A DNA stretch of 64,000 nucleotides from Mytilus edulis (Eukaryota). Where the stretch lies: positions 72,106,001 to 72,170,000 of the forward strand of contig NC_092350.1 in NCBI RefSeq assembly GCF_963676685.1. Direction: 5' to 3'. The notes below the pieces were generated by a model. The model was not told the origin of the DNA. It was given only the letters and a program-made list of their open reading frames with translations, and searched no databases. A program made the translations under genes and the position numbers. Below, in pieces: positions 5,661-34,154 of this stretch. Every line of letters begins with the position of its first letter. Positions within the stretch are counted from its first letter, which is position 1.

Positions 5661-5957
5661 TATTAAGACTATTTTTGAAGATATTTGATATAATTCTTGT
5701 TGACACTGGAATCAACATTTGGTTGGCCTCATTCCAACAGATGTGTGTTTGTGAAATGACAACGAAAAATCACTTACAAAAAATCACATACATACTCCTT
5801 TGATTTTTTACAGAAAAGAACTGCAGACACAAATAATAAAGTCTTTAATCTCTGAAGAATAGCAGATTTTTTTTTAAAACGGATTGGAACGTTTTTCCTA
5901 TTTACAAGAAATATAAATAATTAAAAGTCATTTAACAAAACAAGGTAAGGGCTTAGT

Positions 5958-10600: not shown

Positions 10601-11071
10601 TGGCATGACTGTACGGTGTACAAATTTGTAACAAGAAGGATGTACCATAACGTCCATTTTCCGATCACACACCGGTAATTGTAGTCATTTAGGGGCAATA
10701 ACTCTTTTTGGAAAGAGATTGACAATTTAGTTTTAGTAGACTTGTTTGTAGATTTTGTCCTTCTAATAATGTTTTGCTATTAAAAAATTCGGTTGTACTC
10801 ATAGATAAAAGGCAGATTGACAAAATTTGTAAAATCATTATTTAAGAGCAATAACTACTATAGGGTCTCGACTGAAGTTTGCGTCAGTTTTACCTATAAG
10901 CAGAACTCCTCTTTTATAATTTTCGTTCTGTAGATTATCTTCTTTGTATACATCTATTCACTTTGATATATAAAGCCATTTGCCTTTTTGTCATAAGATT
11001 ATAGTGGTGATGGCATATCCGCGTCGTTTATTTCTTTCAAGGGCCAGAACATTGCTTTTTAGTACACATTT

Positions 11072-11523
11072 GGTCCGAGACCACCATTGTCGTCCCTTGA
11101 TTTTCGTTGTTCACGAATATAGTCCCTAGTGTTGACAGTGGGTTACTTGTCTATAATTTTTATACCCCTTCCAAACTTATTTCTTCATGTTTAATGCCTC
11201 AAATTGCAAGTAGGGGAGTGAAATTACACTGTAAAAAAATTGGGGTCCAGAATTTTAAAGGGAAGTAGTGATTTGGTCCAGCTGAAAAGGGTTAAAAATT
11301 AGCACTTCGGAAGATGTCAAAAGATTTCAAGACGCCCCTCAACATAAAATTGTCCATATTTTGAGTTAGAGCTGATGAAGTTTTCTATAATTTTGATATA
11401 ATTTGTCCCACAAGTAGTACAACACACTGTAAAAATTTCTTTGAGAAAGCGCAGGTGGGATTTTTTTTATTTTCATTTATGTTCTAAAAGAAATGCACTA
11501 CGAAATAATTGTGGTCTCGGACC
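11072..11523. mobile_element. MITE of the same family as 3614-4056, opposite orientation, TSD ATTT
   Basis: GGTCCGAGACCAC...GTGGTCTCGGACC; ATTT at 11068-11071 and 11524-11527; interior homologous to 3614-4056. Confidence 0.9.
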
Positions 11524-12536
11524 ATTTACCCACTTGGCATTATGTGTTAAGCATTTAATAATAAGGCAATGTCGACATGAAGTTGTAGCATAATGGCCAT
11601 TGAGAACCAACAACGTCTCGAAACAGGAGTATTTTGTTCTCTGTGCCATCAGAGGATGTTCTAGGAACGTTTTCGTTTCAAGCAACAACAAAAAATCTAT
11701 GTTAACACACGGCTATTTGTCTTTTGGAACAGGATATGCCTACAACATAAGATAAGCCTCTATTGAAATCAGTATTTATATTGCTAAATACTTATTCTTA
11801 ATACTGAGCATCTGTCAAAAGTAAGAGATGTTTTCCCTGATAGACAGAAATAATTGGACATAAAAGCTAGTCAACGTATTATTTGTTGTCTTTGAACTCT
11901 ATGGCTTAATTTTTTTTCGATAATTTACGTATTAAGTTGAGCAAGGGTAGAAAAATAAGCCATATTTAATGGGGAATAAAATTTGAATATTCAAGATATT
12001 AAATACACACAACCGATAGCTATCAACATGTCAAACAATATATTATTGCGGTCTACGTTTAATTCCAGCCAACGATAACCATTCGATTAAAATGGCCAAT
12101 AACCATAAACAAAAAAGCGTAATTGGAAAATGAAAAAGATTAGATATTTTTAACCAAAACTATCTATTGGCAAAACATGAAAAAAAAACAACAAACAATT
12201 GTTTCGACAAATTAACAAAAAAAAAAAAAAATAAAAAAAAACATGAGCGCTAGCAATACTTATATCATAAATTCTTACAGATTCAAAGAGACTTTATTAT
12301 ATTCACTAATAATAATCTTGACTTTAAAAAAGATAACCAGCGCGTATCAACGACACTTTTATGTAAGTCTTCGTCATGAGTATACGCAAATAAATGTTAT
12401 TCAGTTCTATGTTATGCAATGTATCTACTTTTCATTTTAAAATCTATATATGTTATATTATTTTCTTTGCTAAACATAGTATGATATAACGTTTAACGTT
12501 GCTTTTTTGAAATAACACAATAGCAGCAAATATAGT

Positions 12537-14231
12537 TTATGTGTAATTAACGCTGTACAAAAATGCTTGGCCGTCAGTTTCATTTGCAACCAGCACGGAT
12601 TTGAATTTTTCACTATAGCAAAGTGCCCATGGAGAACCACACAGGTCCTTCTCTGACAGGAGTATTTTGTGACCTCTACCATGAGAAGATATAGCCACAA
12701 CGTTTTTTGATTTGTTCCCCGCAACAAAAGCATTTCCATATTCATCAACTGTAATACCTCTAGGTACATTTAGAACCGACGTGTCTGTGTATGTCCATAG
12801 AACGTCACCGTTTTTATTATGACAGACGATGGTATTCGTGTCCCTTTTTCTAGAGTACAGTGTATTGCCTAATGCAGCCAAATTCAATGAGGTCATAGAA
12901 CTGCCAATACCATATGTTTTTGTATCTTCTAATCTGATTTTTTGTATCTGTCCTTTTTGGGGACTTACTATAAAATGATTATCTTTATAAGTTAAGCCGC
13001 AACAAGGGGAATAAGTGCGAACAATTGTGAATGTTTTACCTGATTCCATATTTATAAGTTCGATATTCTCCATAGTCATTGAAACAACGGCTACAGTTGT
13101 GTCGTCGACACATGCAACATCATAAATATATGGTAAATCGCAGTTAATTTTTCGATTTATTTCCCCATCAGGTGAAAATAATGTCAAATACGAGGGACAG
13201 TTGTTTGACACTACAAGTTTTCCGGAAGGTAAAATACAACAGCCTGACACATTAAAAGCTTTAGTTTTAAATTTCGTTTTTAACTCCAGATTTATATTCT
13301 CTACGGAACATTTTGGTTTCACCATTACTTTCATCATTTGAGTCTGAATTAGCTTGCTTCTTCGTAGTGATAATTGAAATGGTATGACATCTATGACGAC
13401 TTTTCCAAACGAAGTTATGTGTTTGTGTATATTTTGTAATAACGGATTCAACTGGGAAGAAACAACAGCGTGAACCAAAGTACCACCATCAATACAATCC
13501 TGTAGGTGTTTTTCTTGTTTTAGTAGTTTGGTGTCTAATTGCGCAATTCCCAAAAATGTTTGCATATCTGTTGCATAATTCTTTAAGCTTTCTAAATCTT
13601 CTATGCACTCGTCGATTTCTGTTTGGTTATTCTTCAGAGATGCAATGAAGCTCTGTATTTGTTGGGTAGATTTTTCCACAGCTTTGTTAAGTTCAGCATT
13701 AAAATTGTCTTGTATTAAGTCGAGATGGCGAGTTATCTGCTGCCGAATCGCTAATATCTCGGACTCAATTAACTTTTTCGAGGCTGAAATTGAAAATAGA
13801 TTCTTTTGTTTGTGTTCCAGAAGTAAACCAAAGTTTGCCTTCAGTTCGTGAAGTGATGTTTCAATTTCTGTAAATGCTGCAGATGTTTTGGAATTTTTAA
13901 TCACATCTTCAATGGGAACCATTTCTTTACATTTTCCGTGCTTCTCTGTAATAACACATTTTCTACACACACATTCATTATGCTCTTTGCAAAACAATAG
14001 GTATTTCTCGTTGTGATCATCACAGTGCAGTTTTATGTTTCCAATAAAAGATGGAAACGTTTGATATTCATTAATAGGAAAACCGTTGTGGTTTCGTGAG
14101 GCCTTAGATAAGCTATGATGTTCTGAACATTCTTGGCACAATCCTTCTTCACAATCAGAGCACCAAATAGCAGCCGGTTTTGAAATGTATCGCAAACTAC
14201 AAATACCACAATTATCGAAAGAAGTGGCCAT
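12537..14231 (-). CDS. TRIM-like copy 2, intact 564 aa (B-box x2, coiled coil, NHL/beta-propeller, no RING)
   Basis: TTACAG|GTC ATG at 14231; CGIC..WCSDCEEGLCQECSEHH; CDDHNEK..FCKEH..CVCRKC..H; PRGITVDEYGNAFVAG NHL-like repeats. Confidence 0.93.
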   Translation of the reverse strand: MATSFDNCGICSLRYISKPAAIWCSDCEEGLCQECSEHHSLSKASRNHNGFPINEYQTFPSFIGNIKLHCDDHNEKYLLFCKEHNECVCRKCVITEKHGKCKEMVPIEDVIKNSKTSAAFTEIETSLHELKANFGLLLEHKQKNLFSISASKKLIESEILAIRQQITRHLDLIQDNFNAELNKAVEKSTQQIQSFIASLKNNQTEIDECIEDLESLKNYATDMQTFLGIAQLDTKLLKQEKHLQDCIDGGTLVHAVVSSQLNPLLQNIHKHITSFGKVVIDVIPFQLSLRRSKLIQTQMMKVMVKPKCSVENINLELKTKFKTKAFNVSGCCILPSGKLVVSNNCPSYLTLFSPDGEINRKINCDLPYIYDVACVDDTTVAVVSMTMENIELINMESGKTFTIVRTYSPCCGLTYKDNHFIVSPQKGQIQKIRLEDTKTYGIGSSMTSLNLAALGNTLYSRKRDTNTIVCHNKNGDVLWTYTDTSVLNVPRGITVDEYGNAFVAGNKSKNVVAISSHGRGHKILLSEKDLCGSPWALCYSEKFKSVLVANETDGQAFLYSVNYT

Positions 14232-14437
14232 GACCTGTAAACACAAACAGTTTGTTACTATAGATAGTTCTATGTGGTTTAATTTTAAAATAAATTAAAC
14301 AATGGAACGTCATAAAGTCAAGACAAGGTATTTTGTATTGTATTTGTTTCTTCGTTATTTTTTTTTTGGTATACAATCTTGATTTAAAAAAAAACATCAA
14401 ACTATAAGTAATAACATTTACGGTACCAAATTTCATG

Positions 14438-14479
14438 CACCAGATGCACATTTCGACAATACATGTCTCTTCAATGATG
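14438..14479 (-). ncRNA. Minimal type I hammerhead ribozyme (second family) with C3>U core change
   Basis: Minus strand CATCA-TTGAAGA-GACA(TGTAT)TGTC-GAAA-T(GTGC)A-TC/TGGTG. Confidence 0.75.
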
Positions 14480-15754
14480 GTCGTAGCCAAAATATTTGAA
14501 ATCCAAAGAATATGATCATTATTTTACAAGAATGGACAGACTGAAAGTTGTGTCTGCTTTACTGAGTATGGTTAATGACCTTCTACTACAGGTTAAACAA
14601 TTTAACATAATCAATATATTATGAATCACGACTCCAAAAAATATTATATACAACAAAGGAAGTGTGACAAGAGCCATTATTTGGCACCTGATATTGTAAC
14701 ATTAGTACATTTATTCAAGACTTGCAAAAATATTTTTATTTTATTGATACAGGAACTTGTTATTTAAAATGTGTACACTTCAACATGTGATGTCACTATT
14801 ACGTCATAAAGATATTGAAATTCACATTTTTTTACCAACAATTGCCATATAAAACATAGATTTTGGACAAAATATATATGAACAAGTGCTTTGCCTCTTA
14901 TGCTATTATACACACATTGACATCTTTATAATATATATTTTGTTACAAACTATCTTTTTATGTAAAGTGTTGGCTCATATCTTACTATTAATTACTTTCC
15001 ATTCGTTATGTTAGTTGATTTTTTGAGGACTTTCCATTAAGTTTTGTAGATTTCAACAAAATCTAGAAAAAAGAACTATCAATTCTGACAGAATAGTATT
15101 GTAAGAACATCTTGGAAGGGTGTTAGTTGATAGATTTGTAATATTTTTTTTAATTTTCGATTACCAATGTCCAAAAATATGGCATTAACATGTCTTCTCC
15201 TTTTGTTGAAAATATGATGTACTCAAGTACCGTTCATCAATGAGCTATCAAAATGACAAGGTCAGGTGAACTCTTTCAGACAAACGTTTCCTCTTAAAGC
15301 TGTTTAAGCTTATATAATTAAAACGGAAAAAAAGTATATAGCCTTAGTCAAGAAATTAATCAGACTTCTCCATGAGGGAGATATATTCCTTAAACTAGTC
15401 TTGTTTTGAAATTATAATATTGATTCACGAACCATGTAAATGCATAGGGTCTATTATTGAGAAACTCTTGTGTTAGACTGAAACTTGTGTTAGACTGAAA
15501 TAACTCTTCTCAGCGACGATCAATGAACCTTGAAGTTTTAGTCTGGTCTACATTATTAGCTGGATGATTACGCCTAATTATAAGCTAATAAGTGTTTATG
15601 CCTAATACATTTTGTTGAACGATGTCAAAGAGAGATAGTTTTGTATAGATCATTTTCGGTTATACATCTATATGAGCTTAAATTGTAGATTTGATTACGC
15701 TTTTTAATACCTCCTGCATATGAATTTATAATGAGAGCATCAACATATGTACAT

Positions 15755-15890
15755 ACCTTAAACCCAATTAAAACCAATTAAACATCACACTTGGTAAAGT
15801 TTTAAAGTTCAACAAATGTGTACAGGTAGGTTAATGATACGTCATTTTCTTTAATCACGTGAACACGGTGAAATCTTACAGATTAGATAA
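15755..15890 (-). promoter_or_regulatory. Putative promoter and short non-coding exon 1 of TRIM copy 2
   Basis: Donor TAAG|GTATGT at 15756; ACGTCA 15839, CACGTG 15856, AGATAA 15885, in the same order as upstream of copies 4, 5 and 6. Confidence 0.6.
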
Positions 15891-16843
15891 TTCAAAATAC
15901 AACCAATAACTTAATAAAATATCAACCTGAGGCCCTTAGTAGCATGCACGTATGGCTTAATATTCGATAACAGGTTACATTGTATATGTTAAAAATATTT
16001 AAAACCTTAATAAAACATTAATAAGCATATCAACTTGAGAATCTTTCTTGATCCAAATACTTGTGTTACACGGGAAACTCTATACAAAGAAAAAATATCA
16101 AAGATACTAGGCTTATTATTTTAATTATTCTATTATTGTTGTGTATATTTTTTTCTTTTTCTGTACGTCTATCAATATAACACCTGATTAAGATCTGTGA
16201 ATATCATTCTAATCGGTACTAGCATTGTTTTTTTGTTAATTGGAACATAGAATATGATAGTTATGCAGTTCTGAAAACTTATTGTCCTTAATCCTGTCGA
16301 TGCTATTACATATATGTATACTTATATTTCGGCATTGCACAAGGTAATGTTTTTCAGACTGTTTTTGACATCTCGATTTTCCGTTTAAATGGTTTATTAA
16401 AGAAAAATAGTTTTTAAATGAATAATTTGTCAAAGTCTACACACAAGTATGTAGAAAATTTGTACTCAGTTGACATTTTTAAAGTTTGTGATACAATAAA
16501 TCACAAATTTCACGAAAATTGGTATCTCAAGAACGAAAATGAATCCTCACTAGTTTCAATTTACTTTGAATTTGCTTCAATAACTGCAAGCACTCTGGTA
16601 TCGGTTACTTTACGTCTTGTCTTGGTTTAATCCGATGAGTCCAGCCATTTCCAACACATTTTCAGTGTGTTATAATGTTGTTACACCGCTGTCCCATTTT
16701 AGGCTCACAAATATGTTGAACACCGTCATATACATGTCCTGTGGATCACGGTCATATTAGATTTGTGTTGTAAGATATGATGTTGCTCATTGTTTTTATG
16801 TCTAAGGTGATCTATAGTCGCGTACATGCACGTAATTCCGACT

Positions 16844-17031
16844 CAGAGTTCTCCCCAGGGTCGTTTAGCATCATGGTAATGTGATGCTTTAATCTTACAT
16901 GTGATGCTATCTGAAGTAGATTTCTTATAGATTATGTTATGGCTGTGATGTTATAATTTTTAGAAACACGATGGTATTTCAATTTCCCCTGTTTACCAGG
17001 ATGCTATATAAAATATCTGGGGAGAACACTG
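16844..17031. mobile_element. hAT-like MITE
   Basis: TIR CAG(A/T)GTTCTCCCCAG; degenerate 8-bp TSD TTCCGACT/CTCGGACT. Confidence 0.75.
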
Positions 17032-17485
17032 CTCGGACTCAATTTGAAATTTGTCTCAATGGCTATCATTCAACATATCCTTATGTATATATACAGGTCT
17101 ATCAGTAGATCATCCGTTTCCAAAGTATAATGAAAGAAACAAAAGATATTTAAAATGTGTACCAAAGGCTTCGTATAAGTTAAGCTGTCTGTTTCCTCTG
17201 GATAAAAAATAAATAAAGTACCTCTATCAATCTCAGATACCAAGCTTCTTCCTTTGTTCATCAGTGAAAATAAAACCAAAAAATTAGAAGGCCTGATGAA
17301 ATTCTAAGTAGATGAGCATTGAATACAAAAAAAATGAAAAGTTTTGTTAAATAGGACCAAAACTATATACTATGCTTGAAGGTCGACAAAAAACCTGTGT
17401 CCCGAATAATTCAACAATGTGTAAACGGTAATTTAAAACACAATCGTATATAAATATCAAGTCATCAAATATGGGTAAACACTGA

Positions 17486-17680
17486 AAATAAACTCATCAT
17501 AGATACCAGGACTAAATTTAGTATACGATCGAAGACTCATCAGTGACGCTCGAATCCAAAAAAGTTAAAAAGGCCAAATAATGTACGAAGTTGAAGAGCA
17601 TTTAGGACCAAAATTCCTAAAAGTTTTGCCAAATACAGCAAAGGTAGTATATGCCTGAGGTAGAAAAGCCTTAGTATTCA
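17486..17680 (-). mobile_element. Hammerhead-bearing repeat with the ribozyme GAAA/stem III deleted
   Basis: Reverse complement of the 26829-27031 family; CTGATGAGTCTT is joined to CGATCGTATAC. Confidence 0.8.
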
Positions 17681-18954
17681 AATAGACTTAACCATGAAAC
17701 TTAACATGGACCAATCAACTGTAAACATAGAATTTTTAAAGTGACATTTCTGTAGATGAATTATTGCATTGTTCATTTTTGCTGTTTACTGATTGTCGGT
17801 CAAGTAATTTGCAAAAATACTTAAATTGTCACTCAAAGTAAATAGCTCATACAAGTGAGTTATTAGATTATTTGTGTGCAAATAATGAAAAGAAATGTAT
17901 GTACACACACCTGTAGTTGCTTCTTCAACCTTTTTTTGGTTACCTGTGGATATTATTTGGAACCATTTGGTGCCACTGTTTTTATTTTATTTTACTTCTT
18001 TATTGCACAATTGGTGGATAATGTTCCTTAATATAATTTTTATATATAATAAGTATATTGTACACACCTGATATAAAATACATTTCAGACGCATAATATT
18101 TATGTTGTGTGTTGTTTTAATTTTTTTTTGCCTATTTTTCAAACTTAACTTTTTATCATTTAAATCAGAAATGTATTTAATGTTTATATTAATGTGACAA
18201 ATGGTACAAGATAAAATTTGTAACAATTAAAACTTACATTTTTATTATTATACAAAATGTATTTGTACATTGAATTTATAATATTAGTCTTCAATTAATT
18301 TACCCTATTTTTATTGTTCTGCTTGAAAAATGCAGGCCATTCAAATCTGAACTTAGGTATACTAACAAAATATACTTTTATACTCCTAAATGGATAGTTT
18401 ACATAGGTTCAAACCCCATGTATGGACATCCCTTAGATTTCTCCCATTCAACTGTAAATCTATTACTTAACAGGGATGTTTGTCTGATTGTGTAAGATGT
18501 ATATGTATGTGGCCATCTCCAGTAAGAAATGAGTTGATAAACCAAAGCCCCATGTAGAGTGCGATGCTCTCTACACTTGAATGAGTCCTTGAAACAACTC
18601 TTTGAAGATATTGCAGGTTGAATATTGCAAGGCAAAGTGCCCTACCCCTAAACATCATAACCTTCTTTTCCAGTGAGCTCACCAAGCCCCCGTCGACCTA
18701 TTTTGTACAAATCTTCTCTTACATTTTTGTTTTCTTTATCCTGAATTGGCAAAAAATTCCCAAATTGGCAAGAAATATTTGCCACTGGATGTAAGGCAAT
18801 TAGTTATCAATTTTACATAAATCTATCAATAAAATTAACTTTTTTTCTCATCATTACAAATAAGATGATCTACAAACATCATCCAATATCCAGCATGGTC
18901 AAGCCAGTTACATCATGAGAATGTATGTTATTCAACATCAAGGGGTCACACAGT

Positions 18955-19105
18955 ATAAAAGAGGGACGAAAGATACCAAAGGGAGAGTCAAACTCATAAA
19001 TCTAAAATAAACTGACAACGCCATGTCGAAAAATGAAAAAGACAAACAAACAATAGCACACATGACACAACATAGAAACTAAAGAATAAACAACAGGAAC
19101 CCCAC
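18955..19105 (-). mobile_element. 3' tail of the Penelope-like RT family
   Basis: ATAAAAGAGGGACGAAAGATACCAAAGGGA matches 33321 onward and the reverse complement of 51745-51895. Confidence 0.8.
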
Positions 19106-19413
19106 ATATAAATGTAGCTCTTCTTGTAACAATAAATTAAGTTTGACAATATAGTATTTCAAATAACAAGTCAGATCAGTCAGGTACTCAATACATTTTG
19201 AAATAATTCTTAAATAAGGAGATGAATCAACAAACAAGCAGTCACAACAATAGTCACAATTCTCACTTTGTACAGAAATAGAAACAAAAGAAGTGGTCAA
19301 TTTTTTTTATAATGAATTTAATAGAAAAAGATGACATTAATAAATAAATGAAAAATATAATAATAATAGCACAAGAATGAGGTGTTTAAACAATGTCAAG
19401 CCAAAGTCTGGCT

Positions 19414-19461
19414 TCAGTTATCAGGGTATGTCAGTTGAAATCTGTAGTAATCCTGCATGCT
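19414..19461 (-). CDS. TSP-like terminal coding exon G
   Basis: TTTTTCAG acceptor, then SMQDYYRFQLTYPDN*. Confidence 0.6.
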   Translation of the reverse strand, partial: SMQDYYRFQLTYPDN

Positions 19462-19758
19462 CTGAAAAATAAAACAAAAATCATAATCAAGGTTAATTCA
19501 AGAAATGACCTTTGGCCCCACAAAACTTATTTACATCTTCATGTGGATCTTCTTATGTGTTTTAATACACTTATATATATATATATATTTTAAGTGAAAA
19601 TCCAATCCCATTTAACAAGATTAAACATTCTTTTAAATAGTAAAAATCAAAACTGAGCTTGTTTCCATGACACTATACACTGAGTAAACATTTTGTACAG
19701 GTTCTTTTACATTAACATGAGTAATTGCTACTTTATGCATAGGATCTACAATGTACAT

Positions 19759-19902
19759 ATAAAAAAGAAGATGTGGTATGATTGCCAATGAGACAACTAT
19801 CCACAAAAGACCAAAATGACACAGACATTAACAACTATAGGTCACCGTATGGCCTTCAACAATGAGCAAAGCCCATACCGCATAGTCAGCTATAAAAGGC
19901 CC
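19759..19902 (+). repeat. Short interspersed repeat (AAGAAGATGTGGTATGATTGCCAATGAGACAAC family)
   Basis: Related copies at ~24760-24855 (-), ~26420-26692 (-), ~36120-36235, ~43865-43915, ~52000-52135 (-) and 61788-62005. Confidence 0.65.
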
Positions 19903-20242
19903 TGATTTTATCCTGTCACAATAACTGTTGAATTTACAGTATTCAGAAGTATGTCAATGTAAATTTATCTATGGATTTTTACATCCTTCCTCCACTAATG
20001 TTTAATGAAGTTTCTTCTTAATAATTGTCCTCATGAACTTCTCAATTTATCTTTAAACAAATATATGTTTTTTATTGACTTGATACAACCATCATATGTA
20101 ATTGCATCCCTGTGACTTTGAGATGAAGAACATCAATCAGAGTTCTGTTATTTGTGTGTTTTGATGTGCATGAACGGATTCTGTGCCATGAATGAATACC
20201 CTTTTTTCTGTCAAAAAATAAATTTTTCAACTCCTTAAATAC

Positions 20243-20431
20243 AGCACTCCCATTAACCTGTGCTGTCAGAGACAGTAAACCAGTATTTGTCAGTGAACTG
20301 GTTCCATTAGTCTGATCAAACTTGAAATACAACTGTCCATAATTATGATATTTAGGATACTCATCCACTAATGGTAGCTCTATGTGTTCTACAACTTCTG
20401 TCTCTAGTATGGCAATATTGAAGAATTGGAA
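20243..20431 (-). CDS. TSP-like exon F
   Basis: FQFFNIAILETEV..GQLYFKFDQTNGTSSLTNTG..NGSA; acceptor clear, donor uncertain (GTATTT at 20242, or a mutated site near 20230). Confidence 0.7.
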
Positions 20432-20829
20432 CTAAACAAATAAATAAAATACTGTTAATTGTGTGCGTTTATAATTGCAATTTTTGTCATTTTACACTAA
20501 AAGGATTTTAATGTTTGCAAGATTTAGTAAAATCCGGTTTAATTCATATAAAAATCAAAATGTGGGTTTAAATTATTGCAATATTATCCTGTCGCAATAA
20601 CTTCTGAATTTACAGTATTCAGAAGTATTTCAATGAAAATTTATCTATGGATTTTTACATCCTTCCTCCACTAATGTTTAATTTTAGATCCCCCCCCAAA
20701 AAATGGCTAAAAATTTCTTTTTTTTTACAGTGAAGATGATATAAATTAAAAGCATCATCCTTCCAGTGTTTTTGTGATACAAAGTCTCACAATTAATTGA
20801 AATTGTCTTATAGGAAGAATGAGACAATA

Positions 20830-21495
20830 AACTAGAGGCTCTAAAGGGCCTGTGTAGCTTACCTTGGTCTATGTGCATATCATAAACGAATAAAAATTTA
20901 CAAAATTTACAAAATTTATGAAAATTGTTTAAAAATTGACTATAAAGGGCAATAACTCCTTAAGGGGTCAACTGACCATTTTGGTCATGTTGACTTATTT
21001 GTAGATCTTACTTTGCTTAACATTATTGTTATTTACAGTTTACCTCTATCTATATTAATATTCAAGATAATAACCAAAAACGGTAAAACTTCCTTAAAGT
21101 TAACAATTCTAGGGCAGAAACCCAACAATGGGTTCTCCGATTCATCTGAAAATTTCAGGGCAGATAGAATTTGACCTGATACATAATTTTACTCCAGTCA
21201 GATTTGCTCTAAATGCTTTGGTTTCAGAGATATAAGCCAAAAACTGCATTTTACCCCTATGTTCTATTTTTAGCCATGGCGGCCATCTTGGTTGGGTGGC
21301 CGGGTCAACGGACACATTTTTTTTAACTAGATACACAAATGATTGGGGCTAAGTTTGATTAAATTTAGTCCAGTAGTTTCAGAGGAGAAGATTTTTGTAA
21401 AAGTTAACGACAACAGAAGCAGGACGAAGTAGGACGCCAGACGCCAAGTGATGAGAAAAGCTCACTTGGCCCTGTGGGCCAGGTGAGCTAAAAAA
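20830..21495 (-). mobile_element. Non-autonomous Helentron-like (HINE) element
   Basis: Terminal AGCTCAC..GGCCC/GGGCC..GTGAGCT hairpin next to a T-run, (GACG)-like microsatellite, related GCTTACC motif at the other end. Confidence 0.6.
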
Positions 21496-21670
21496 GAACA
21501 GTATGGCATTATGAAATCAAAATTTTAATATGTACAGACAACACCTTGTCTAAGTTTAGGTTTCAAAAAGCTAATACCTATTCAGTAGCCTCTAAAAACT
21601 TTGAGATTAATTCTTCCTTGTCTAGATTCTACATTTATTTATGCAAACAAATTTTTAAGTAATTATTAAT

Positions 21671-22570
21671 TACAAGAGTGCACAGGCTTTATGTCTCACC
21701 TTCTTTACTAATCATTGATATTAAGTTGATAGTCCTAAATATAAAGCTTAATTACAACTTTCACATAAACTTAACCTTAACCAAGAAAACTAAACATTGA
21801 CCAATGAACCATGAAAATGAGGCCAAGGTCAGATGAACCATGCCAGGCAGGCATGTTCAGCTAACATTTCTTCCATACAACAAATATAGTTGACCTATTG
21901 CTTCTATTGCTTATAGTTTAAGAACAACAGACCAAAACACAAAAACTTACCACTGAGCAATGAACCATGAAAATGAGGTCAAGGTCAAATAAAACGTTAC
22001 AACCATTCCATACACCAAATACAGTAGACCTATTGCATACAGTATAAAAAAACAGACTGAAACACAAAAACTTAACTATAGCCACTGAACCATGAAAATG
22101 AGGTCAAGGTCAGATGACACCTGCCAGTTAGACATGTACACGTCACAGTGCTTCCATACACCGAATATACTAGAACTATTGCTTATAGTATCTGAGATAC
22201 CAAAACTTAACCTTGTTCACTGATCCATGAAATGAGGTCGAGGTCAAGTGAAAACTGTCTGAAGGGCATGAGGACCTTGCAAGGTACGAACATACCAAAT
22301 ATATTTATCCTATTACTTATAATAAGAGAGAATTTAACATTACAAAAATACTTTTTTTTCAAGTAAACACTGAACCATGAAAAAGGTCAAGGTCATTGGA
22401 CATGTGACTGACGGAAAGTTCGTAACATGAGGCATCCATATACAAAGTATGAAGCATCGAGGGCTTCTACCTTCTAAAATATAAAGCTTTTAAGAATCAA
22501 GCTAACGCTGCTGCCGGATCACTATCCCTGTCGAGCTTTCTGCGACAAAAGTCGCAGGCTCGACAAAAAA
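21671..22570 (-). mobile_element. HINE-like element with about 5 internal satellite units (TGAACCATGAAAATGAGGTCAAGGTCA)
   Basis: Units at ~21805, 21961, 22087, 22221 and 22371; terminal hairpin TGTCGAGC-CTGCGAC-AAAA-GTCGCAG-GCTCGACA beside an A-run. Confidence 0.65.
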
Positions 22571-22705
22571 CAGACCCATAATGTTCACCGTTTTTTTGAC
22601 CTGTTGAAGTAATATCTATGTAGTTTTTCTTTAATCAAATTAATCAAAAAATTAACCTTGTAAATTATTCAAGCTTTGGCTTAAATACATGCTACTGGTA
22701 CCTAC

Positions 22706-22786
22706 CTCATCAATATAACCTTGGTAATAGTTACTGCCATCTGTACCTAAGTACAGGAATGTGTCTGCTGTGGATGAATATAGACT
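22706..22786 (-). CDS. TSP-like exon E (LamG-like)
   Basis: SLYSSTADTFLYLGTDGSNYYQGYIDE; GCAG acceptor, GTAGGT donor. Confidence 0.85.
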
Positions 22787-23366
22787 CTGCAATAAATTCA
22801 ATAAAATTAAGCAATAATTCAGACCCCTGTTATTCTAACAGACTATAGAATAATCTTCTTATAGCTATTTTAGTACTTTATTTGGACTTTTTAACTTTTT
22901 TGTTCGAGCATCTTTTGTAGATAAAACATGCGACTGGCTTTTACATTTTTTTTTATCCTGGTGTCTATCATGAGTTTATTTCCGAGGGAATCTTACTGGC
23001 ATTATGGTTATAATTATAAATAAACTAAAAATAAATTCTACATAGAGCATCAACAATCAAATTTCATAAATGACAAACTTTACCTTTATAACTAAAGACA
23101 ACCATCATCACTAGCTAAAGACATGTATATGGATATTTAGCAGGGGAAACTAGTTTTTAGAGCACTTTCTCTTTTAAAAATAAAATCATGCTACATAAAA
23201 TATTAGTCATGCCATACCAAGTGCCGTTGATTTTCTTTGTATGGATGGACCTCAATAAATGTTCAACAGAGAATTTTTTTCTATAGGCTTGTATAACAAA
23301 CAAAAAAAGTTTTTATTCCACAAAAAATTGGTCCCAACTAAATGAATTTACAGTATCTACTCTTAC

Positions 23367-23437
23367 CAAATCTACTGGTTTTATATCTGTTGTCTGACTG
23401 GACAATGTTCCATCAATATAAAGCTTCAATGCACAGT
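23367..23437 (-). CDS. TSP-like exon D (LamG-like)
   Basis: DCALKLYIDGTLSSQTTDIKPVDL; TTTTCAG acceptor, GTAAGA donor. Confidence 0.85.
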
Positions 23438-24056
23438 CTGAAAAGAGAAAAAGTTGTAATTACTTAAAGATTCGTCATTATTTCAGCCATGGGGACTAAT
23501 TTGTATAAAATCTTATAGATGAATTTCTTACTCAACATTACTAAAATGTCAGACCAAATACTACATGATTATCTTGTTAAATCAGAAGCTATCAGAGGAA
23601 ATAAGTCTGAAACTACACACAAATAATACTTTTTCTAGGCCATTTCATTTAGTGGATTATCCCCACATAATGTTCAGCTACTTTTTTCAGAGCTGACCTC
23701 TCTGTGTGTCTTTACTAAAAACCTGGATTAGCCACTGAGTATGAACCAAAAGTTGAAGACAGAGGGACTGACTGACATACAAAATGGTTGTATAATAATC
23801 TTTATTTGACATATAAGTAACATTATACTTGTGACAAAAACAAAAGTAACAACAACCATAAAATAACTGAGTTGAACACACACATATCTATATATATATA
23901 CAAGTAAAACTAACTAAGAGTCCCCTGTCCTCAGCTCTAAAGACTGTTTTATAAAGGAACCTGTTTTTTCACTTGATTTATATTAGAAGGATTTAGTAGG
24001 ACTACTAGTTTTTGGGTATCAGATAGGATTATCTACTGCCATGTCATTAAAAAGTT

Positions 24057-24215
24057 TTATATGTAAATATTATTAATTTGACAGTAGAGGAGAAAGTGAT
24101 TTTCATCTTCTAAGGTTTTACAAGTTGGACATGTTCTATTGTCTCGAGGTATTTTTAGATATCTGCCCTTCTCAATGAGAAAATTATGGTCACTAATTCT
24201 AATTTTGGTAGATTG
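24057..24215 (-). mobile_element. Non-LTR retrotransposon ORF2 C-terminal zinc-finger fragment (RTE-X-like)
   Basis: KIRISDHNFLIEKGRYLKIPRDNRTCPTCKTLEDENHFLLYC. Confidence 0.7.
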
Positions 24216-24229
24216 TAGTATATAATTAC

Positions 24230-24432
24230 CAGTCTCGTCATAAATCAGTACCACGCTTGTCCATTGGTCCGCAGTGACAGCTGAGGCGGCCTGTACAGTT
24301 GAGTTTATATACTGTCCATTCACAATGCCGTTTTCTATCCACAAACATATGGTATGATTTTCAGTACACAATATTGGCATTTCTGTCGTAGGGTATCCTG
24401 TTTCCACCATGACCCATACATCTAAGGTAAAA
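24230..24432 (-). CDS. TSP-like exon C (LamG-like)
   Basis: SFTLDVWVMVETGYP..CLWIENG..DQWTSVVLIYDET; pyrimidine-rich CAG acceptor, GTAATT donor. Confidence 0.85.
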
Positions 24433-24871
24433 CTGAAAGAAGGGAGATAAACAAAGATAAGTTGAGGCGTCTCTGCTCTGAATACCTTTTGGACCTTACA
24501 TAAAATTGGTTTGTGCTGATCTCTTTTTGAAATTCAAATTCTCCTTTAAACAAAAAAAAAACCACCATAAATTGTAAATTAATTTGAAGCAATTTACTAT
24601 CTATATGAATTTTTTTAAAAAGAATATCAAAATATTTAAAAAAAAAAAAATGACTAAATCAACCGGCAAACATTCTTAATTTGTTTTTTTCTGGAAATGG
24701 CCTCTCTGTCCATCTAATTTTAAATTTTCCTGTTTTACATTTGTGATGTGGTATGTTTTTCTTTCTTGTTGATGGCCATATGGTGACATTTGGCTGCTTA
24801 TTTCTAGCTCAGATGGTCTGTGGCGGATGTCTCATTAGCAATCATACCACAACTTTATTTTCTATATTTAC

Positions 24872-25096
24872 CTATGATATATATTTAGATCACCAATATT
24901 AGTCAAAGCAACATAGCCTGAACTTCCACTCAAATACAACGCCATATTTTCTCGATCTATACATTTGACTTTTAAATCAGACCACAGCGACATCTGTTGA
25001 CCAAACTGGAAGACACCAACTCGTCCACCAGTTATACTTGTATCATAGATGTCACCACTGTCTATCAGTAGAGAGTTGATGTCATAAATCTTTAAT
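24872..25096 (-). CDS. TSP-like exon B (end of TSP_C, start of LamG-like domain)
   Basis: LKIYDINSLLIDSGDIYDTSITGGRVGVFQFGQQMSLWSDLKVKCIDRENMALYLSGSSGYVALTNIGDLNIYH. Confidence 0.88.
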
Positions 25097-25233
25097 CTGT
25101 TTCAAAAAGATAAATAGAGCATAGATAAATTAACATGCCAGGTAGTGAATAAAAAAATTAGAAAGAATTTCCTAAAGACCTGTTTTCAATTGTCTGGAAA
25201 AATTGGTTTTAACTGATTTTGACATTTACATTA

Positions 25234-25438
25234 CTGTAAATTCAGAAATTATTGCGATATTTTTATTAATGCCAAAAAATGGACAAGGTTATAATCGCAA
25301 AAATTTAAACTCACATATGAATTTTTTCATATGAATTTAACAGGATTTTTCTAAATATCCCAAAAACTAAAATCGCATTTTAGTCTAAAATAGCAAAATT
25401 GCAATTATAAATGCACACAATAATTTCTGAATTTACAG
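25234..25438. mobile_element. MITE with TA TSD
   Basis: TA|CTGTAAATTCAGAAATTA...TAATTTCTGAATTTACAG|TA; related remnants at ~20450-20616 and ~23350. Confidence 0.8.
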
Positions 25439-25457
25439 TATATCTATTTTAACTTAA

Positions 25458-25850
25458 GGATGTACTCAAGTGATGTTTTGGAATTTGTGTCAAATGTTCG
25501 ACCTCCTTGGTGTTTTTCCATACAATAAAATGTAAACCCCATAACACCCATTTATTTTTTCATATAAGACTTTAAAATAGCGCATGAAAGGTCATTTACC
25601 AAAATTTTTGAAGATTCTTAATTTTCTTTCTTTTGTTTTGAGAACTAATAATACCAATGCAAATATATGGTAAAATTCCGAGTCAGCCTTTTCCCGCCAT
25701 ATTTTAAATCTCAAATATCTCGAAAAGGAGGTCCATGACCTGTTAATATGTTTAGCTTATTTTTATCCTTAATTGATGCTCTACCAGTTTATAGTACTAA
25801 TTTTAACTTCTTAATTTATTGATTTTCACCTAACCTCACTTAGTACACCC
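25458..25850. mobile_element. MITE with TTAA TSD (Kolobok-like termini)
   Basis: TTAA|GGATGTACTCAAGTGA...TCACTTAGTACACCC|TTAA. Confidence 0.75.
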
Positions 25851-26174
25851 TTAATTTTAGCATGATTTTGGTGTTTTTCATGTCTCTTCAGAATCATGTG
25901 ATATATCATCTTCATAATTTGACACTTTATAATGATTGAAAGGTTCCCTCTTATGTTCAATATCAATGGACGGACCTATGTTTTAATTAGAACAAATAAC
26001 ACAACAAAAGATAAATCGAGGGCTACAAACAGTTTTCAAAAATAGACAAATATACATGTCAGACTGAAAATCATTTGGAGTCTAACAAAACAAAACAAAC
26101 CCACATTATTATATGACACTTATGTAGACAGTAACATAAATATATGGCAGAAGTATACTGGTACAGTATCTTAC

Positions 26175-26347
26175 CTTATTTTACCCAGTTCTGTGTTGTG
26201 TGTAAGAAACCATTTATAAGAAGTGAAGTTGCTCCAGGCTACCAGGCTGGGGTCATGCCAAAGAACTGTTAACTCGTTGTCTGTTGATGTATCAAGTCAT
26301 AAGACCTCAGCTAATGACTATGATGGTCCACTGTTGGAATCGACTGC
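26175..26347 (-). pseudogene. TSP-like exon A (TSP_C) with two in-frame stops
   Basis: AVDSNSGPS*SLAEVL*LDTSTDNELTVLWHDPSLVAWSNFTSYKWFLTHNTELGKIR; TAG at 26320-26318, TGA at 26299-26297; donor GTAAG. Confidence 0.88.
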
Positions 26348-26828
26348 CTAAAATTTACTCTGACAGTTATACTTTTTATTTAAAAAATTCAATCATTTTT
26401 ACTAAATAAAAATTTTTCACCTGTCATAAGTCAGGAATCTGATGTTCAGTAGTTGTTGTTTGTTAATATGGTTCATAAATGTTTCTTGTTTTTTTTATAT
26501 AGATTAGACTGTTGGTTATTGTGTTTTACACTAGAATTTTTTTGGGGCCCTTTATACTGGTAGCTTGCTGTTTGGTGTGAGCCAAGGCTCCGTGTTGAAG
26601 ACCATACCTTTACCGAAAATGGTTTACTTTTATAAATTGTGACTTGGATGGTGGGTTGTCTCATTGGCACTCATACCACATCTTCCTATATCTACTGACT
26701 GCTTGTTCTATATGTGTTTGTTTGCACTTACTTTAGCGTACAATTTATACAGAGTTTTCATTGTCAGCCATATATCATACTGGAAAGTTAACACAAATAA
26801 AAAAGAAGTGTTATCTTCCCCCTCCCGC

Positions 26829-27031
26829 TTTTCTACCTCAGGCATAGATTACCTTAGCTGTATTTGACAAAAATTTTAGGAATTTTTGTCCTCAATGCTA
26901 TTCAACTTCGTACTTTGTTTGGCCTTTTTAACTTATCTGGATTCGAGAGTCACTGATGAGTCTTTTGAAGACGAAACGCGCGTCTGGCGTATATACTAAA
27001 TTTAGTCCTGGTATCTATGATGAGTTTATTT
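26829..27031 (+). mobile_element. Hammerhead-bearing interspersed repeat with complete 3' end
   Basis: TTTCTACCTCAGG...CCTGGTATCTATGATGAGTTTATTT; same family as 3270-3504. Confidence 0.8.
26948..26989 (+). ncRNA. Minimal type I hammerhead ribozyme, full core
   Basis: GTCA-CTGATGA-GTCTT(TTG)AAGAC-GAAA-C(GCGC)G-TC/TGGC; predicted cleavage after 26984; palindromic GCGC loop III. Confidence 0.88.
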
Positions 27032-27203
27032 ATGGTATTACATTACATGTTATACTAGTACACAAAGCCATTATGAAAGTTTAGTTTATGTATCATTCGA
27101 CAAAACTAGATAAAATAATTAAATTGTACGTGCCCCACTATTTTGTTGATCGAAAACTCGTTAACGGTTATTTTTGTGCTAAGTTTACACTGTACCAAAA
27201 TGC

Positions 27204-28871: not shown

Positions 28872-30056
28872 AACCTATAAAAACAATCTCATATTATCAT
28901 AAAGTATCACATATGTTTAAATAAGGAATGAAAATAAAACACAATGAACTGGGTCAATTTCCCTTAATTATTTTCAATAGGCGTTAATGGTAACGTCTTT
29001 TCCTGTAGCTCAGTCCATATCGTAAACTGTGATATGTAAGATGATTTGTTTCGAAGCTGATACATTTGCACATATGTTGTTAAATTTTCGGGCTAAGAAG
29101 TGTGATGATTTTTTCCGTTAATAAGCATACCCCGAAAATCATTTCGTGATTTGGCTCCTCGAGGTACAAAATCCCTTTATTTTCACAATAAGTTCTTTAA
29201 TTTAATTAAGATTTAATAATTTGAACACATTTCATAGCACCTTAGTTTTTACACAATTATTCTAGGTTCCTCTCCTTTCCAAATCAATACAAATAGTTAA
29301 GATTAGTCTATTGAGGCGCATTAAGGATATTGACCCACCTGAACAATTAACTATATGAAATATGTAGCTGATTTCAGGTTTCTACGACTTATGTTTAGCC
29401 TGGATATTATATATACATATTGCAATCTGATCAAGTCATTCTAATTATAAGTTGTATAGTATTTTCTGATTTCGAAATCATTCTCTTTTAAGGCTCAAGC
29501 AGTCATCATGTTGTACTTACTACAGTCGGAAACTACTTGTAAAAATATATTTAGGTCAATGATTGAATTGAGTAGGGTTTATCCCTGTATAATGACGAAA
29601 TTTATGTGTGTTTATAAACTTTTAAAATAGAAAATCCCAATTACACCGCTTTGTGGTGTTTTTGACAGATACAAGCTTCTAATTGGGCTGTATCGGTTAC
29701 CCCTTTATCACATAAACCATTGGTTTATAAGGAAATGTTTACAGTATGTTTTTCACATTTTCATTCATTTAATTTAGTCAACTTCATGGGTGTCCGTCCG
29801 CCGTGACTTCAGTTTGCTTAACCTTCATTAAGAGCTACATCTACATACTTCAAAATTTTGAAGATTACAAGAAGGCACCTACCAGGATTTTTTTTAAAAT
29901 CTGAGCATACTTAGAATAAATTCAAAACATGCTTTGTAAAAAATATTTGCAAAATTAGCAAACACCAGATTTTGATCTAACAATAAATATGTCTTTCTGC
30001 AAAAGACTTAAATTGTTCCACCTCTGGGTATGGTAGGGAAGTCCAGGAAAACATGT

Positions 30057-33794: not shown

Positions 33795-34154
33795 GTCATG
33801 TAGGTCGATGTCTGTAAATGAACTCGAAATATTAATTGCTAAGACGTCAACTCAGTAATATCCTTTATCAGTAAAATACGAAATGTTGAAAATATACGGA
33901 GACGTTCTTTTAATCATGAGAGTGCTACTGTTAAGTTTCGTAAAATTCAACAAGGTCCGAGAAAGTTATTGATGTCTGACGATAACGAAGCAAACGACGA
34001 CAGAATGAAGGATCACTATGTTTCCCTTCTACGACATGCAACGAGTGTTAGAAAAATCCCGGAATGAAAGTTTATGCAGGTTATTTGTACGACATATCTA
34101 TAATTAAATATATTTATAATTTTGAGTAAAACAATAAAACATCTAAAAATACAG

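What the first reader, a model, noticed from the sequence alone, without database searches (positions are those of the whole stretch)
19414..26347. Hidden thrombospondin-superfamily gene end with a LamG domain after TSP_C, embedded in the TRIM cluster
Seen: seven exons splice in phase (exon F donor uncertain) and translate to TSP_C hallmarks (SGP..L...LW-like, LWHDP, W...TSYKW.L.H, DSG.IYD....GGR.GVF.F.Q....SDLK..C). These run directly into LamG/concanavalin-like motifs (ALYL.G..GYV, SFTLDVWV, W..V..IYD, LKLYIDG, LYLG, G.IDE). The ORF track shows only exon C and part of exon F. Known: canonical thrombospondins end at TSP_C, so a further domain implies a non-canonical member; invertebrate mega-thrombospondins are a candidate, recalled and not verified. 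I found no upstream TSP exons (type 3 DxDxDG repeats) in the remaining 37 kb. Inference: this is either a displaced 3' duplicate, or a very large host gene whose intron holds TRIM copies 3-7 on the same strand.
Basis: partly seen in the sequence, partly recalled or inferred. Interest (0 to 1): 0.8.

Follow-up and report, generated by a model that had tools for sequence, protein, structure and literature searches.

The report
Broken tail of mega-thrombospondin gene copy
This is the leftover tail of an extra copy of a giant thrombospondin-like matrix gene in a bivalve genome; it has lost its front and carries stop codons, so it is an ordinary decaying gene copy and not a new kind of protein.

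Summary
They encode the last ~107 profile positions of TSP_C, followed directly by a Laminin_G_3/ConA-like domain and a short conserved tail.

That architecture is not new. It is the published C-terminus of mega-thrombospondins (PMC6526912), and 6 of 6 long database homologues I scanned have TSP_C followed directly by Laminin_G_3.

The window copy is a fragment:
- Its homology to a complete-looking paralogue 770 kb away (C7:72.898-72.941 Mb) stops at window 26822, inside the intron before exon A.
- No type-3, EGF or earlier TSP_C exon lies in the window or near it in the genome.
- Exon A has two nonsense codons (parent CAG, TGG).
- The exon F donor is GT>TT.

RNA contigs and reads confirm junctions A-B, B-C, C-D and D-E, but exon A is covered only by parent-like molecules.

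One unexpected result: the exons show a strong purifying-selection signature (pN/pS 0.13; window branch 9 synonymous to 4 non-synonymous changes; no exon indels). The copy is therefore more likely a recently disabled remnant of a once-working tandem paralogue than a dead-on-arrival duplicate.

Verdict: an ordinary pseudogene fragment of a known family, of low interest.

The parts
26175..26347 (-). Exon A: TSP_C profile ~92-151. Two premature stops: TAG 26320-26318 and TGA 26299-26297.
   Evidence: Pfam TSP_C E 5.9e-8 on the piece after the second stop. Genome scan match over profile 92-190 with stops. Alignment to the parent shows CAG>TAG and TGG>TGA. W conserved in p73 and p22. RNA contigs end exactly at 26175 and 26347.
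24872..25096 (-). Exon B: end of TSP_C (profile 151-198) running into the start of the second ConA/LamG-like domain. Open frame, AG/GT intact.
   Evidence: Pfam TSP_C E 6.9e-15. tblastn to P0028 residues 2643-2715, which spans its TSP_C end (2690) and Laminin_G_3 start (2699). Alignment to the parent. A-B junction in contig X1-7.
24230..24432 (-). Exon C: core of the Laminin_G_3-like domain. Open frame, splice sites intact.
   Evidence: Weak Pfam hit, E 0.0047. 95% amino-acid identity to the parent exon. 44 database hits, with the long ones matched inside their Laminin_G_3. Joints 24435>24875 and 23435>24230.
23367..23437 (-). Exon D (..LKLYIDG..). It lies in a 96% identity tract (23336-23792), a likely gene-conversion patch.
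   Evidence: Joints.
22706..22786 (-). Exon E (..LYLGTDG..GYIDE). Open frame, splice sites intact.
   Evidence: Joint 22786>23367.
20231..20431 (-). Exon F: end of the ConA-like domain and start of the tail. The donor is destroyed (TT at 20230-20229 instead of GT), so the frame reads on to a stop at 20072.
   Evidence: Four-copy alignment. Conserved to about residue 68-73 in p73 and p22. Coordinates.
19414..19461 (-). Exon G: last 15 codons (SMQDYYRFQLTYPDN) plus the TGA stop.
   Evidence: Conserved with p73 and p22. Acceptor and stop conserved in four copies.
26822..27031 (.). Break of homology with the parent at 26822, inside the intron upstream of exon A. A ~200-bp interspersed repeat (26827-27031) follows directly. 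TRIM-unit homology starts at about 27162.
   Evidence: blastn to the parent. Self-blast finds the repeat at 5 other places in the window.
8271..26822 (.). Block collinear with C7:72886670-72902500: parent 3' end, its downstream flank and a TRIM-like gene. Substitution-only identity is mosaic, 80-97.5%.
23793..24210 (.). About 418-bp insertion in intron C-D, absent from the parent, starting 19 bp after the exon C donor. It extends the ORF that the ORF track showed as 'exon C'.
   Evidence: blastn blocks 23336-23792 and 24211-25233 abut in the parent. ORF 24057-24410. No Pfam hit for the read-through tail.

Best explanation
The locus is a non-functional 3' remnant of a mega-thrombospondin (mega-TSP) paralogue.

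Mega-TSPs are very large secreted matrix proteins. Their C-terminus is EGF repeats, type-3 repeats, the TSP_C lectin-like domain, a second ConA/LamG-like domain and a short tail.

This genome has four complete-looking loci of that kind. It also has three 3' fragments strung along 1 Mb of contig C7 among TRIM-like gene clusters, all on the same strand.

The window fragment keeps only the last seven exons. Everything upstream of the intron before exon A has been replaced by a repeat and a TRIM-like unit. Exon A has two nonsense codons and exon F has lost its donor. It therefore cannot make a thrombospondin.

Synonymous divergence from the nearest complete paralogue is as high as intron divergence (~0.2). 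Non-synonymous divergence is ~0.03 and no exon has an indel. From this I infer that the copy was part of a working gene for most of its history and was truncated and disabled only recently. That makes it a relic of a decaying tandem array and not a dead-on-arrival partial duplicate (about 60:25 between those two sub-readings).

Shown: the anatomy, the lesions, the parent, the family architecture and the substitution pattern. Inferred: the order of events and present-day silence.
For: Family and architecture:
- TSP_C on exons A and B.
- 6 of 6 scanned long homologues have TSP_C followed directly by Laminin_G_3. Three of them (P0015, P0028, P0041) also have cadherin, F5/8-C, ephrin-receptor-like, EGF and TSP_3 domains, and P0015 and P0028 have N-terminal LRRs as well (names).
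- The mega-TSP definition includes the second ConA-like domain and a non-conserved tail (PMC6526912 section 6). Bivalve members are listed in its Table 1.

Parent:
- Exon C is 95% identical at C7:72900628.
- Window 8271-26822 is collinear with C7:72886670-72902500.
- The parent is collinear with Pecten mega-TSP residues 1546-2758. A further exon matching residues ~1364-1443 lies at C7:72940525.

Truncation:
- 0 of 17 TSP_3 matches lie in the window.
- Only residues 2587-2758 of P0028 match the window.
- 227 parent upstream pieces hit only interspersed repeats in the window.
- Three upstream parent exons have no copy near the window.

Lesions: two nonsense codons and donor GT>TT.

Selection signature:
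- pS 0.222, pN 0.029, ratio 0.13. 47 of 69 differences are synonymous, P 1.5e-16 against a synonymous-site fraction of 0.215.
- The window terminal branch has 9 synonymous and 4 non-synonymous changes, P 3e-4.
- Exons A to G align to the parent without gaps, while intron blocks carry up to about 11% gap columns.

RNA:
- Exon A is covered only by contigs with 13-17 differences in 173 letters in 3 of 3 contig runs. The parent differs from the window at 15 of those 173 sites. In two of them (X4, X9) the contig goes on for more than 100 letters beyond the acceptor, onto an exon the window lacks; in X1 it goes on for 21 letters.
- 13 of 19 listed exon variants are exactly the parent's letter.
Against: - Exons B to E are fully open with intact splice sites. 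The window's own branch still looks selected (9 synonymous to 4 non-synonymous changes), which a long-dead fragment should not show.
- One RNA-guess contig (X1-5, depth 12.5) is closer to the window than to the assembled parent in the 3' part of exon B (3 differences in 111 letters, against 12 for the parent) and crosses the B-C junction. Expression of a window-like copy in some individuals is therefore not excluded.
- I could not check the two stops and the donor change against DNA reads. They could be private to the assembled haplotype.
- Gene conversion is visible (the 96% tract at 23336-23792) and blurs both dating and branch counts.
- Branch counts are small. The c55 outgroup covers only exons C (44 of 67 codons) to G.
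Confidence: 0.8

Rival explanations
1. Dead-on-arrival partial duplicate. A segmental duplication of a TRIM-like unit copied the neighbouring mega-TSP's last seven exons as a passenger. The exons look conserved only because gene conversion from the working parent, or from its alleles, keeps overwriting them.
For: - The block duplicated with the fragment includes a TRIM-like gene and is 96-97.5% identical to the parent's flank.
- Two more fragments with nested, shorter extents (C to G at 72.55 Mb, E to G at 72.77 Mb) sit next to TRIM units.
- A conversion-like 96% tract covers exon D.
- RNA contigs from other individuals are mosaics of window-like and parent-like letters.
Against: - Outside exon D, exons and their flanking introns are not recently converted. 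Intron substitution-only identity is 80-88% and pS is 0.22, yet pN is 0.029 and exons have no indels.
- Without selection on the copy, pN should be at least ~0.1.
- Conversion tracts would carry introns along with the exons.
Confidence: 0.15
2. The fragment is still in use. Exons B to G (TSP_C tail plus ConA-like domain) would be transcribed from a new start or as a chimera with a neighbouring TRIM-like gene, or the reference carries a null allele of a dispensable paralogue that is intact in other individuals.
For: - Selection-like signature on the window branch.
- Exons B to E are open with intact sites.
- Contig X1-5 is window-like.
- A cryptic in-phase GT lies 12 nt upstream of the dead donor, read from the sequence.
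- An earlier scan note reports an expressed TRIM-like chimera elsewhere in this genome (s1-832275, not tested here).
Against: - No upstream exon, start codon with signal peptide or window-type exon A transcript was seen.
- Exon A depth in X1, X4 and X9 is fully accounted for by one parent-like contig each.
- In X24, every read at the four listed exon B sites (5 of 5 to 8 of 8) and at one exon C site (24387, 5 of 5) carries a non-window letter.
- The upstream TRIM-like ORF ends in its own stop at 27204-27206.
Confidence: 0.05
3. It is the true 3' end of a very large host gene whose introns contain TRIM copies 3-7, with the type-3/EGF exons lying beyond the window.
For: Same strand as the TRIM copies. 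Mega-TSP genes are long: the parent spans at least 43 kb, and the C14 locus about 148 kb between the outermost matches.
Against: - Homology to the parent ends inside the intron at 26822, next to a repeat.
- In the parent the preceding exon is only ~0.9 kb upstream.
- Genome-wide probes with three upstream exons find only the four full loci, plus the canonical TSP and two weak unrelated hits.
- Exon A has two stops.
Confidence: 0.02

Closest known systems
Mega-thrombospondins (Shoemark et al. 2019, PMC6526912). Bivalve examples in its Table 1 include Crassostrea gigas XP_011414789.1. Database relatives found here: Pecten maximus XP_033751294.1 (P0028, 2915 aa), Mizuhopecten yessoensis OWF49028.1 (P0041) and Owenia fusiformis CAH1786413.1 (P0015).
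   Same: TSP_C followed directly by a second ConA/Laminin_G_3-like domain and a short tail. Exon C is 38% identical to P0028 residues 2719-2782 and to P0015 residues 2735-2799. The parent locus is collinear with P0028 through F5/8-C, ephrin-receptor-like, EGF, type-3, TSP_C and LamG.
   Different: The window copy has only the last ~330 codons, two stops and a dead donor. The paper reports one, sometimes two, mega-TSPs per species, whereas this genome has four full-looking loci and three fragments.
Canonical thrombospondins / COMP (locus C4:75.09-75.13 Mb in this genome)
   Same: Shares the TSP_C fold and its conserved motifs (LWHDP, DSG.IYD, GGR.GVF, SDLK.C).
   Different: Canonical TSPs end at TSP_C. 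The C4 locus gave no match to the LamG exon. The window sequence groups with the LamG-bearing paralogues.
Sushi-TSPs (same paper)
   Same: Some also have tandem TSP_C/ConA-like plus ConA/MAM-like domains.
   Different: Reported only in sponges and cnidarians, about 1,000-1,300 aa, with N-terminal sushi repeats. The parent here aligns with the mega-TSP central region instead.
Unprocessed (duplicated) pseudogenes / gene relics in segmental-duplication arrays
   Same: Introns retained, 5' truncation at a repeat, nonsense and splice-site lesions, intact parent nearby.
   Different: Coding divergence is far more conservative (pN/pS 0.13) than expected for a copy that was dead from the moment of duplication.

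Membership tests
mega-thrombospondin (as a gene family; the window copy as a derived fragment) | TSP C-terminal (L-lectin-like, Pfam TSP_C) domain | tested here: met
   Only partly present. Profile positions ~92-198 of 198 are on exons A and B. The exon for positions 21-96 is absent.
mega-thrombospondin (as a gene family; the window copy as a derived fragment) | Second globular ConA-like/MAM/LamG-type domain directly after TSP_C, then a short tail | tested here: met
   Exons B (tail) to F. The Pfam Laminin_G_3 hit on exon C alone is sub-threshold. Exon C aligns inside supra-threshold Laminin_G_3 hits of 6 of 6 scanned homologues. The tail exon G is conserved in paralogues. The spliced peptide was not scanned as a whole, by instruction.
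mega-thrombospondin (as a gene family; the window copy as a derived fragment) | TSP type-3 repeats and EGF-like domains upstream of TSP_C | tested here: not met
   None in the window. Present at the parent, at C7:72903908-72904875 and upstream.
mega-thrombospondin (as a gene family; the window copy as a derived fragment) | Central cadherin / discoidin (F5/8-C) / GFR-Cys-rich region | tested here: not met
   Absent from the window. The parent matches P0028 residues 1546-2158, which include F5/8-C and ephrin-receptor-like, and an exon for residues ~1364-1443.
mega-thrombospondin (as a gene family; the window copy as a derived fragment) | N-terminal signal peptide and ~1,000 aa of leucine-rich repeats; total size typically over 2,700 aa | tested here: inconclusive
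   Absent from the window.
canonical thrombospondin | Protein ends with TSP_C, with no further domain | tested here: not met
   The reading frame continues from TSP_C position 198 into the LamG-like domain within exon B.
processed (retro-)pseudogene | No introns, poly(A) tail | tested here: not met
   Six introns are retained at the same positions as in the parent.
functional protein-coding gene | Uninterrupted frame, start codon, usable splice sites, own transcripts | tested here: not met
   Two stops in exon A, no 5' exons, F donor TT. No window-type exon A molecules in 4 runs. Expression of exons B to E by this copy is not excluded.

The most novel reading that the evidence does not exclude
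The TSP_C-tail plus ConA-like exons have stayed under purifying selection because the locus is still used. Either it is a presence/absence-polymorphic mega-TSP paralogue that is intact in other mussel haplotypes, with the reference carrying a fresh null allele. Or exons B to G are used as a stand-alone or TRIM-driven chimeric ConA-like module. A ConA-like beta-sandwich behind a TRIM-like gene would echo TRIM-B30.2 architecture; that comparison is recalled, not tested.
Probability: 0.08. Interest if true: 0.45.

Novelty: new member of a known kind. Interest (0 to 1): 0.15.

Why it matters
It matters little for protein biology. The 'extra domain after TSP_C' is the published mega-TSP design, and this copy is broken.

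Its modest value is genomic. It documents a 1-Mb array on one chromosome-scale contig in which mega-TSP paralogues are being eroded from their 5' ends among expanding TRIM-like clusters. It also suggests that this bivalve carries more mega-TSP loci (four full-looking loci and three fragments) than the one or two per species reported in 2019.

For annotation, the locus should be flagged as a pseudogene fragment. Otherwise gene predictors may emit a spurious 'thrombospondin/COMP-like' short protein.

Tried and rejected
- Pfam on single exons D, E and F gave nothing. These exons are too short to score alone, so I relied on homologues instead.
- Rfam on 19000-27200 gave 0 families at gathering score.
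- Tandem Repeats Finder on intron E-F found only two trivial arrays. The 'goes back 490' RNA joints are therefore not explained by a tandem array in the window itself.
- The whole-protein genome search with P0028 fell back to a stricter filter. It mostly returned generic LRR genes and was uninformative for the parent's N-terminus.
- The short database hits P0001-P0013 turned out to be ORFs called on genomic DNA that read from exon C into the intron. They are no evidence of expression.
- The literature search for thrombospondin / Mytilus / laminin G / TSP_C listed 4 papers holding at least 3 of the 4 terms. None concerned mussel mega-TSPs, judged from the search listing only. The claim that the mussel expansion is not in print rests alone.
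- The supplements of PMC6526912 (alignments, extra trees) were closed and may list more bivalve copies.
- Host-gene hypothesis: rejected.
- I did not fold any structure.

Full report
**What is there**

The window has no N, is about 32% G+C and is eukaryotic. It is G000:C7:72106001-72170000 in a 1.37-Gb assembly. An earlier scan note calls the genome a Mytilus mussel (s1-832275). I did not test that, but the nearest named full-length relatives are pectinid bivalves.

On the minus strand between 26347 and 19414 lie seven exons with matching phases:
- A 26347-26175
- B 25096-24872
- C 24432-24230
- D 23437-23367
- E 22786-22706
- F 20431-20231
- G 19461-19414, including the TGA stop

**Domain content, exon by exon**

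I scanned 8 stop-to-stop pieces against Pfam.
- Exon A hit TSP_C at 33.2 bits over profile 113-151.
- Exon B hit TSP_C at 55.8 bits over profile 151-198. The cut-off is 25.6 bits.
- Exon C gave only a sub-threshold Laminin_G_3 hit (17.5 against 27.6 bits).
- Five pieces, including those for exons D, E and F, gave nothing.

I then searched exon C (66 aa) against 1.84 billion representative proteins and got 44 hits at E 0.001 or better.
- 34 are under 380 aa. The 8 of them that I read are ORFs called on genomic DNA that run from the exon into the intron.
- 10 are 380 aa or longer, and I scanned 6 of these with Pfam.
- All 6 have TSP_C followed within ~10 residues by a supra-threshold Laminin_G_3. 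The exon C match falls inside that domain.
- P0015 (Owenia, 2952 aa) and P0028 (Pecten maximus, 2915 aa) also carry LRRs, cadherin, F5/8-C, ephrin-receptor-like, EGF and TSP_3.
- P0041 (Mizuhopecten 'Thrombospondin-4', 1689 aa) has the same set without the LRRs.
- Not scanned: P0039 (Acanthaster, 2866 aa) and the three multi-stretch hits P0023, P0035 and P0044.

**Comparison with the literature**

I read sections 5 and 6 and search passages of Shoemark et al. 2019 (PMC6526912). Mega-TSPs are defined there by:
- a signal peptide;
- about 1,000 aa of LRRs;
- a central cadherin-containing region, which in bilaterians also has FNIII, discoidin and a GFR-Cys-rich domain;
[quoted passage not shown] - a non-conserved tail.

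Table 1 of that paper lists bivalve members (Crassostrea gigas, Pinctada fucata and two in Villosa lienosa).

**The copy is a fragment of a paralogue**

TSP_C matches in the genome fall at six loci (17 matches):
- a canonical-looking TSP on C4;
- four loci that also have the LamG exon (C14:52.6 Mb, C7:22.64, C7:72.90, C7:73.03);
- the window.

All loci but the window have TSP_3 matches just upstream of TSP_C. 0 of 17 TSP_3 matches are in the window.

The nearest locus, which I call the parent, is C7:72.90 Mb. It is 95% identical in exon C. Window 8271-26822 is collinear with C7:72886670-72902500.

Homology stops at 26822. That point is inside the intron between the parent's first TSP_C exon (72903110-72903331) and its exon A equivalent. 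A ~200-bp interspersed repeat (26827-27031, five other copies in the window) follows, and then a TRIM-like unit from about 27162.

Evidence that nothing lies upstream:
- tblastn of seven mega-TSP-type proteins against the whole window matched only exons A to C. For P0028 these were residues 2587-2643, 2643-2715 and 2718-2758.
- 227 stop-to-stop pieces from 33.6 kb upstream of the parent's exon A hit only repeats in the window. One 23-aa match at E 0.006 is not credible.
- Genome-wide probes with three upstream parent exons found the four full loci. They also found the C4 TSP and a few weak hits, but nothing near C7:72.1-72.5 Mb.

This rejects the 'large host gene with TRIMs in its intron' alternative.

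The parent itself looks like a real large gene. It is collinear with P0028 residues 1546-2758. It has an exon for residues ~1364-1443 at C7:72940525, so it spans at least 43 kb. I did not reach a possible LRR region.

**Lesions**

Against the parent, exon A carries CAG>TAG (26320-26318) and TGG>TGA (26299-26297). The tryptophan is conserved in the paralogues at 73.03 and 22.64 Mb.

The exon F donor is GAG|TTgaaa in the window. It is GAG|GTgaga in the parent and in the two other fragments.

Exons B to E and G are open with intact AG/GT.

Two further fragments exist:
- C7:72.548-72.5516 Mb, with part of exon C through G;
- C7:72.7668-72.7688 Mb, with exons E to G and a 1-bp deletion in exon F.

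**RNA**

I had one read-laying run. It covered 20360-26359 at 90% likeness or more. The runs were X24 (raw RNA-seq reads) and X1, X4 and X9 (Logan contigs, guessed to be RNA).

Splice junctions seen:
- A-B: contig X1-7 covers 24953-25096 and then 26175-26347.
- B-C: joint 24435>24875, in 4 reads of X24 and in contigs of all three contig runs. The 3-letter offset is what a read with the parent's letter at 24874 produces.
- C-D: joint 23435>24230, in X1 and X4.
- D-E: joint 22786>23367, in 1 read and in three contig runs.
- E-F and F-G were not among the 15 joints listed. 205 more were not shown, and only 72 letters of exon F were in the stretch.

Which copy is expressed:
- In X1, X4 and X9 the whole depth over exon A comes from one contig each.
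- Those contigs have 17, 13 and 17 differences in 173 letters. The parent differs from the window at 15 of those sites.
- All three contigs stop matching the stretch at the acceptor, 26347. The X4 and X9 contigs go on for 117 and 109 further letters that lie on nothing in the stretch, onto an exon the window lacks. The X1 contig goes on for 21 letters.
- Of 19 exon variants listed, 13 are exactly the parent's letter and 6 are neither copy's letter.
- In X24, all reads at 24387, 24909, 24917, 24937 and 24988 (5 of 5, 6 of 6, 6 of 6, 8 of 8 and 5 of 5) carry a non-window letter.

Evidence on the other side:
- Contig X1-5 (depth 12.5) has only 3 differences in 111 letters in the 3' part of exon B. 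The assembled parent has 12 differences there.
- X1-7 is window-like in the 5' part of exon B but parent-like in exon A.

The expressed gene in other individuals is therefore a mosaic of 'window' and 'parent' letters. I see no transcript of the window's own exon A. I cannot exclude transcription of exons B to E from this copy. Exon depth in X24 is low (5.3 or less per bin).

**An unexpected signature**

I counted codon differences per exon and never joined the exons.
- Window against parent: 47 synonymous and 22 non-synonymous differences in 327 codons.
- pS 0.222, pN 0.029, ratio 0.13. P is 1.5e-16 against the synonymous-site fraction of 0.215.

I then placed changes on branches by three-way parsimony with the 72.55-Mb fragment, using exons C (44 codons) to G. 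Rows for exons A and B were dropped because that fragment lacks them and the script's matches there were spurious.
- Window's own branch: 9 synonymous, 4 non-synonymous (P 3e-4).
- 72.55-Mb fragment: 4 synonymous, 5 non-synonymous.
- Parent side: 13-14 synonymous, 6-7 non-synonymous. One codon was misclassified by the script.

All seven exons align to the parent without a single gap. Intron blocks have up to about 11% gap columns and 80-88% substitution-only identity, equal to the synonymous divergence. The downstream TRIM-bearing flank is 96-97.5% identical, and a 457-bp tract around exon D is 96% identical. That indicates patchy gene conversion.

A copy that was dead from the moment of duplication should show pN of at least ~0.1. 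I therefore favour this sequence of events. An old tandem array of complete mega-TSP paralogues existed. This member was working for most of its divergence from the parent. It recently lost its 5' part in the TRIM-cluster rearrangements and then picked up two stops and a donor mutation.

Dead-on-arrival plus conversion remains a rival at about 0.15. Residual function or a null allele of a dispensable gene is a small possibility.

**Verdict**

The interpretation 'non-canonical thrombospondin superfamily member, probably mega-TSP, displaced 3' duplicate' is right. It is not a hidden working gene and not a new architecture. It is a new, broken member of a known kind, of low interest (0.15).

Noticed in passing
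G000 loci C14:52.515-52.663 Mb (+), C7:22.634-22.669 Mb (-), C7:72.898-72.941 Mb (-), C7:73.023-73.056 Mb (-): Four complete-looking mega-TSP-type loci (type-3 repeats, TSP_C, LamG exon and central-region exons) in one genome. The 2019 paper reports one, sometimes two, per species. The C14 locus is closest to the Pecten mega-TSP (up to 66% per exon). The three C7 loci look like a lineage-specific expansion.
   Followed up: partly
G000 C7:72548000-72551600 and C7:72766700-72768800 (loci L033/L034, L035): Two more 5'-truncated fragments of the same gene tail (part of exon C to G; E to G with a 1-bp deletion in exon F). They are on the same strand and next to TRIM-like units. Together with the window copy they form a nested series of truncations.
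   Followed up: partly
window 20760-22560 (intron E-F): Repeat sequences with very high RNA depth (hundreds of reads per position in X24) and abundant 'goes back 490' joints (21403>20914; 147 and 151 reads by first-mate strand). Yet there is no tandem array in the window. This suggests an element that is tandem or circular elsewhere. Unexplained.
   Followed up: partly
window 5954-7676, 12519-14246, 27171-28886, 34147-35861, 42114-43820, 46578-48290, 62432-64000: Seven copies of a TRIM-like unit, all in one orientation and 70-79% identical to each other. The one ORF I read and scanned, 28871-27207 (-), is single-exon, 555 aa, with a B-box, a coiled-coil-like middle and a weak NHL match.
   Followed up: partly
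window 8271-17990 versus 19103-26456: A sharp identity gradient towards the parent locus. The TRIM-bearing downstream flank is 96-97.5% identical, against 80-88% in the thrombospondin introns. This suggests concerted evolution (gene conversion) of the TRIM part but not of the thrombospondin part.
   Followed up: partly
window 23793-24210: About 418-bp insertion absent from the parent, 19 bp after the exon C donor. The exon C frame reads through it, giving a Cys/His-rich tail (C..C....HFLLYC). From memory this resembles the end of some retrotransposon ORFs. Pfam found nothing.
   Followed up: partly
window 24872-25096 (exon B) in runs X1, X4, X9, X24: Expressed sequences from other individuals are mosaics. 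They are window-like in parts of exon B but parent-like in exons A and C. This hints at exchange between the copies, or at a divergent parent allele in the assembly.
   Followed up: partly
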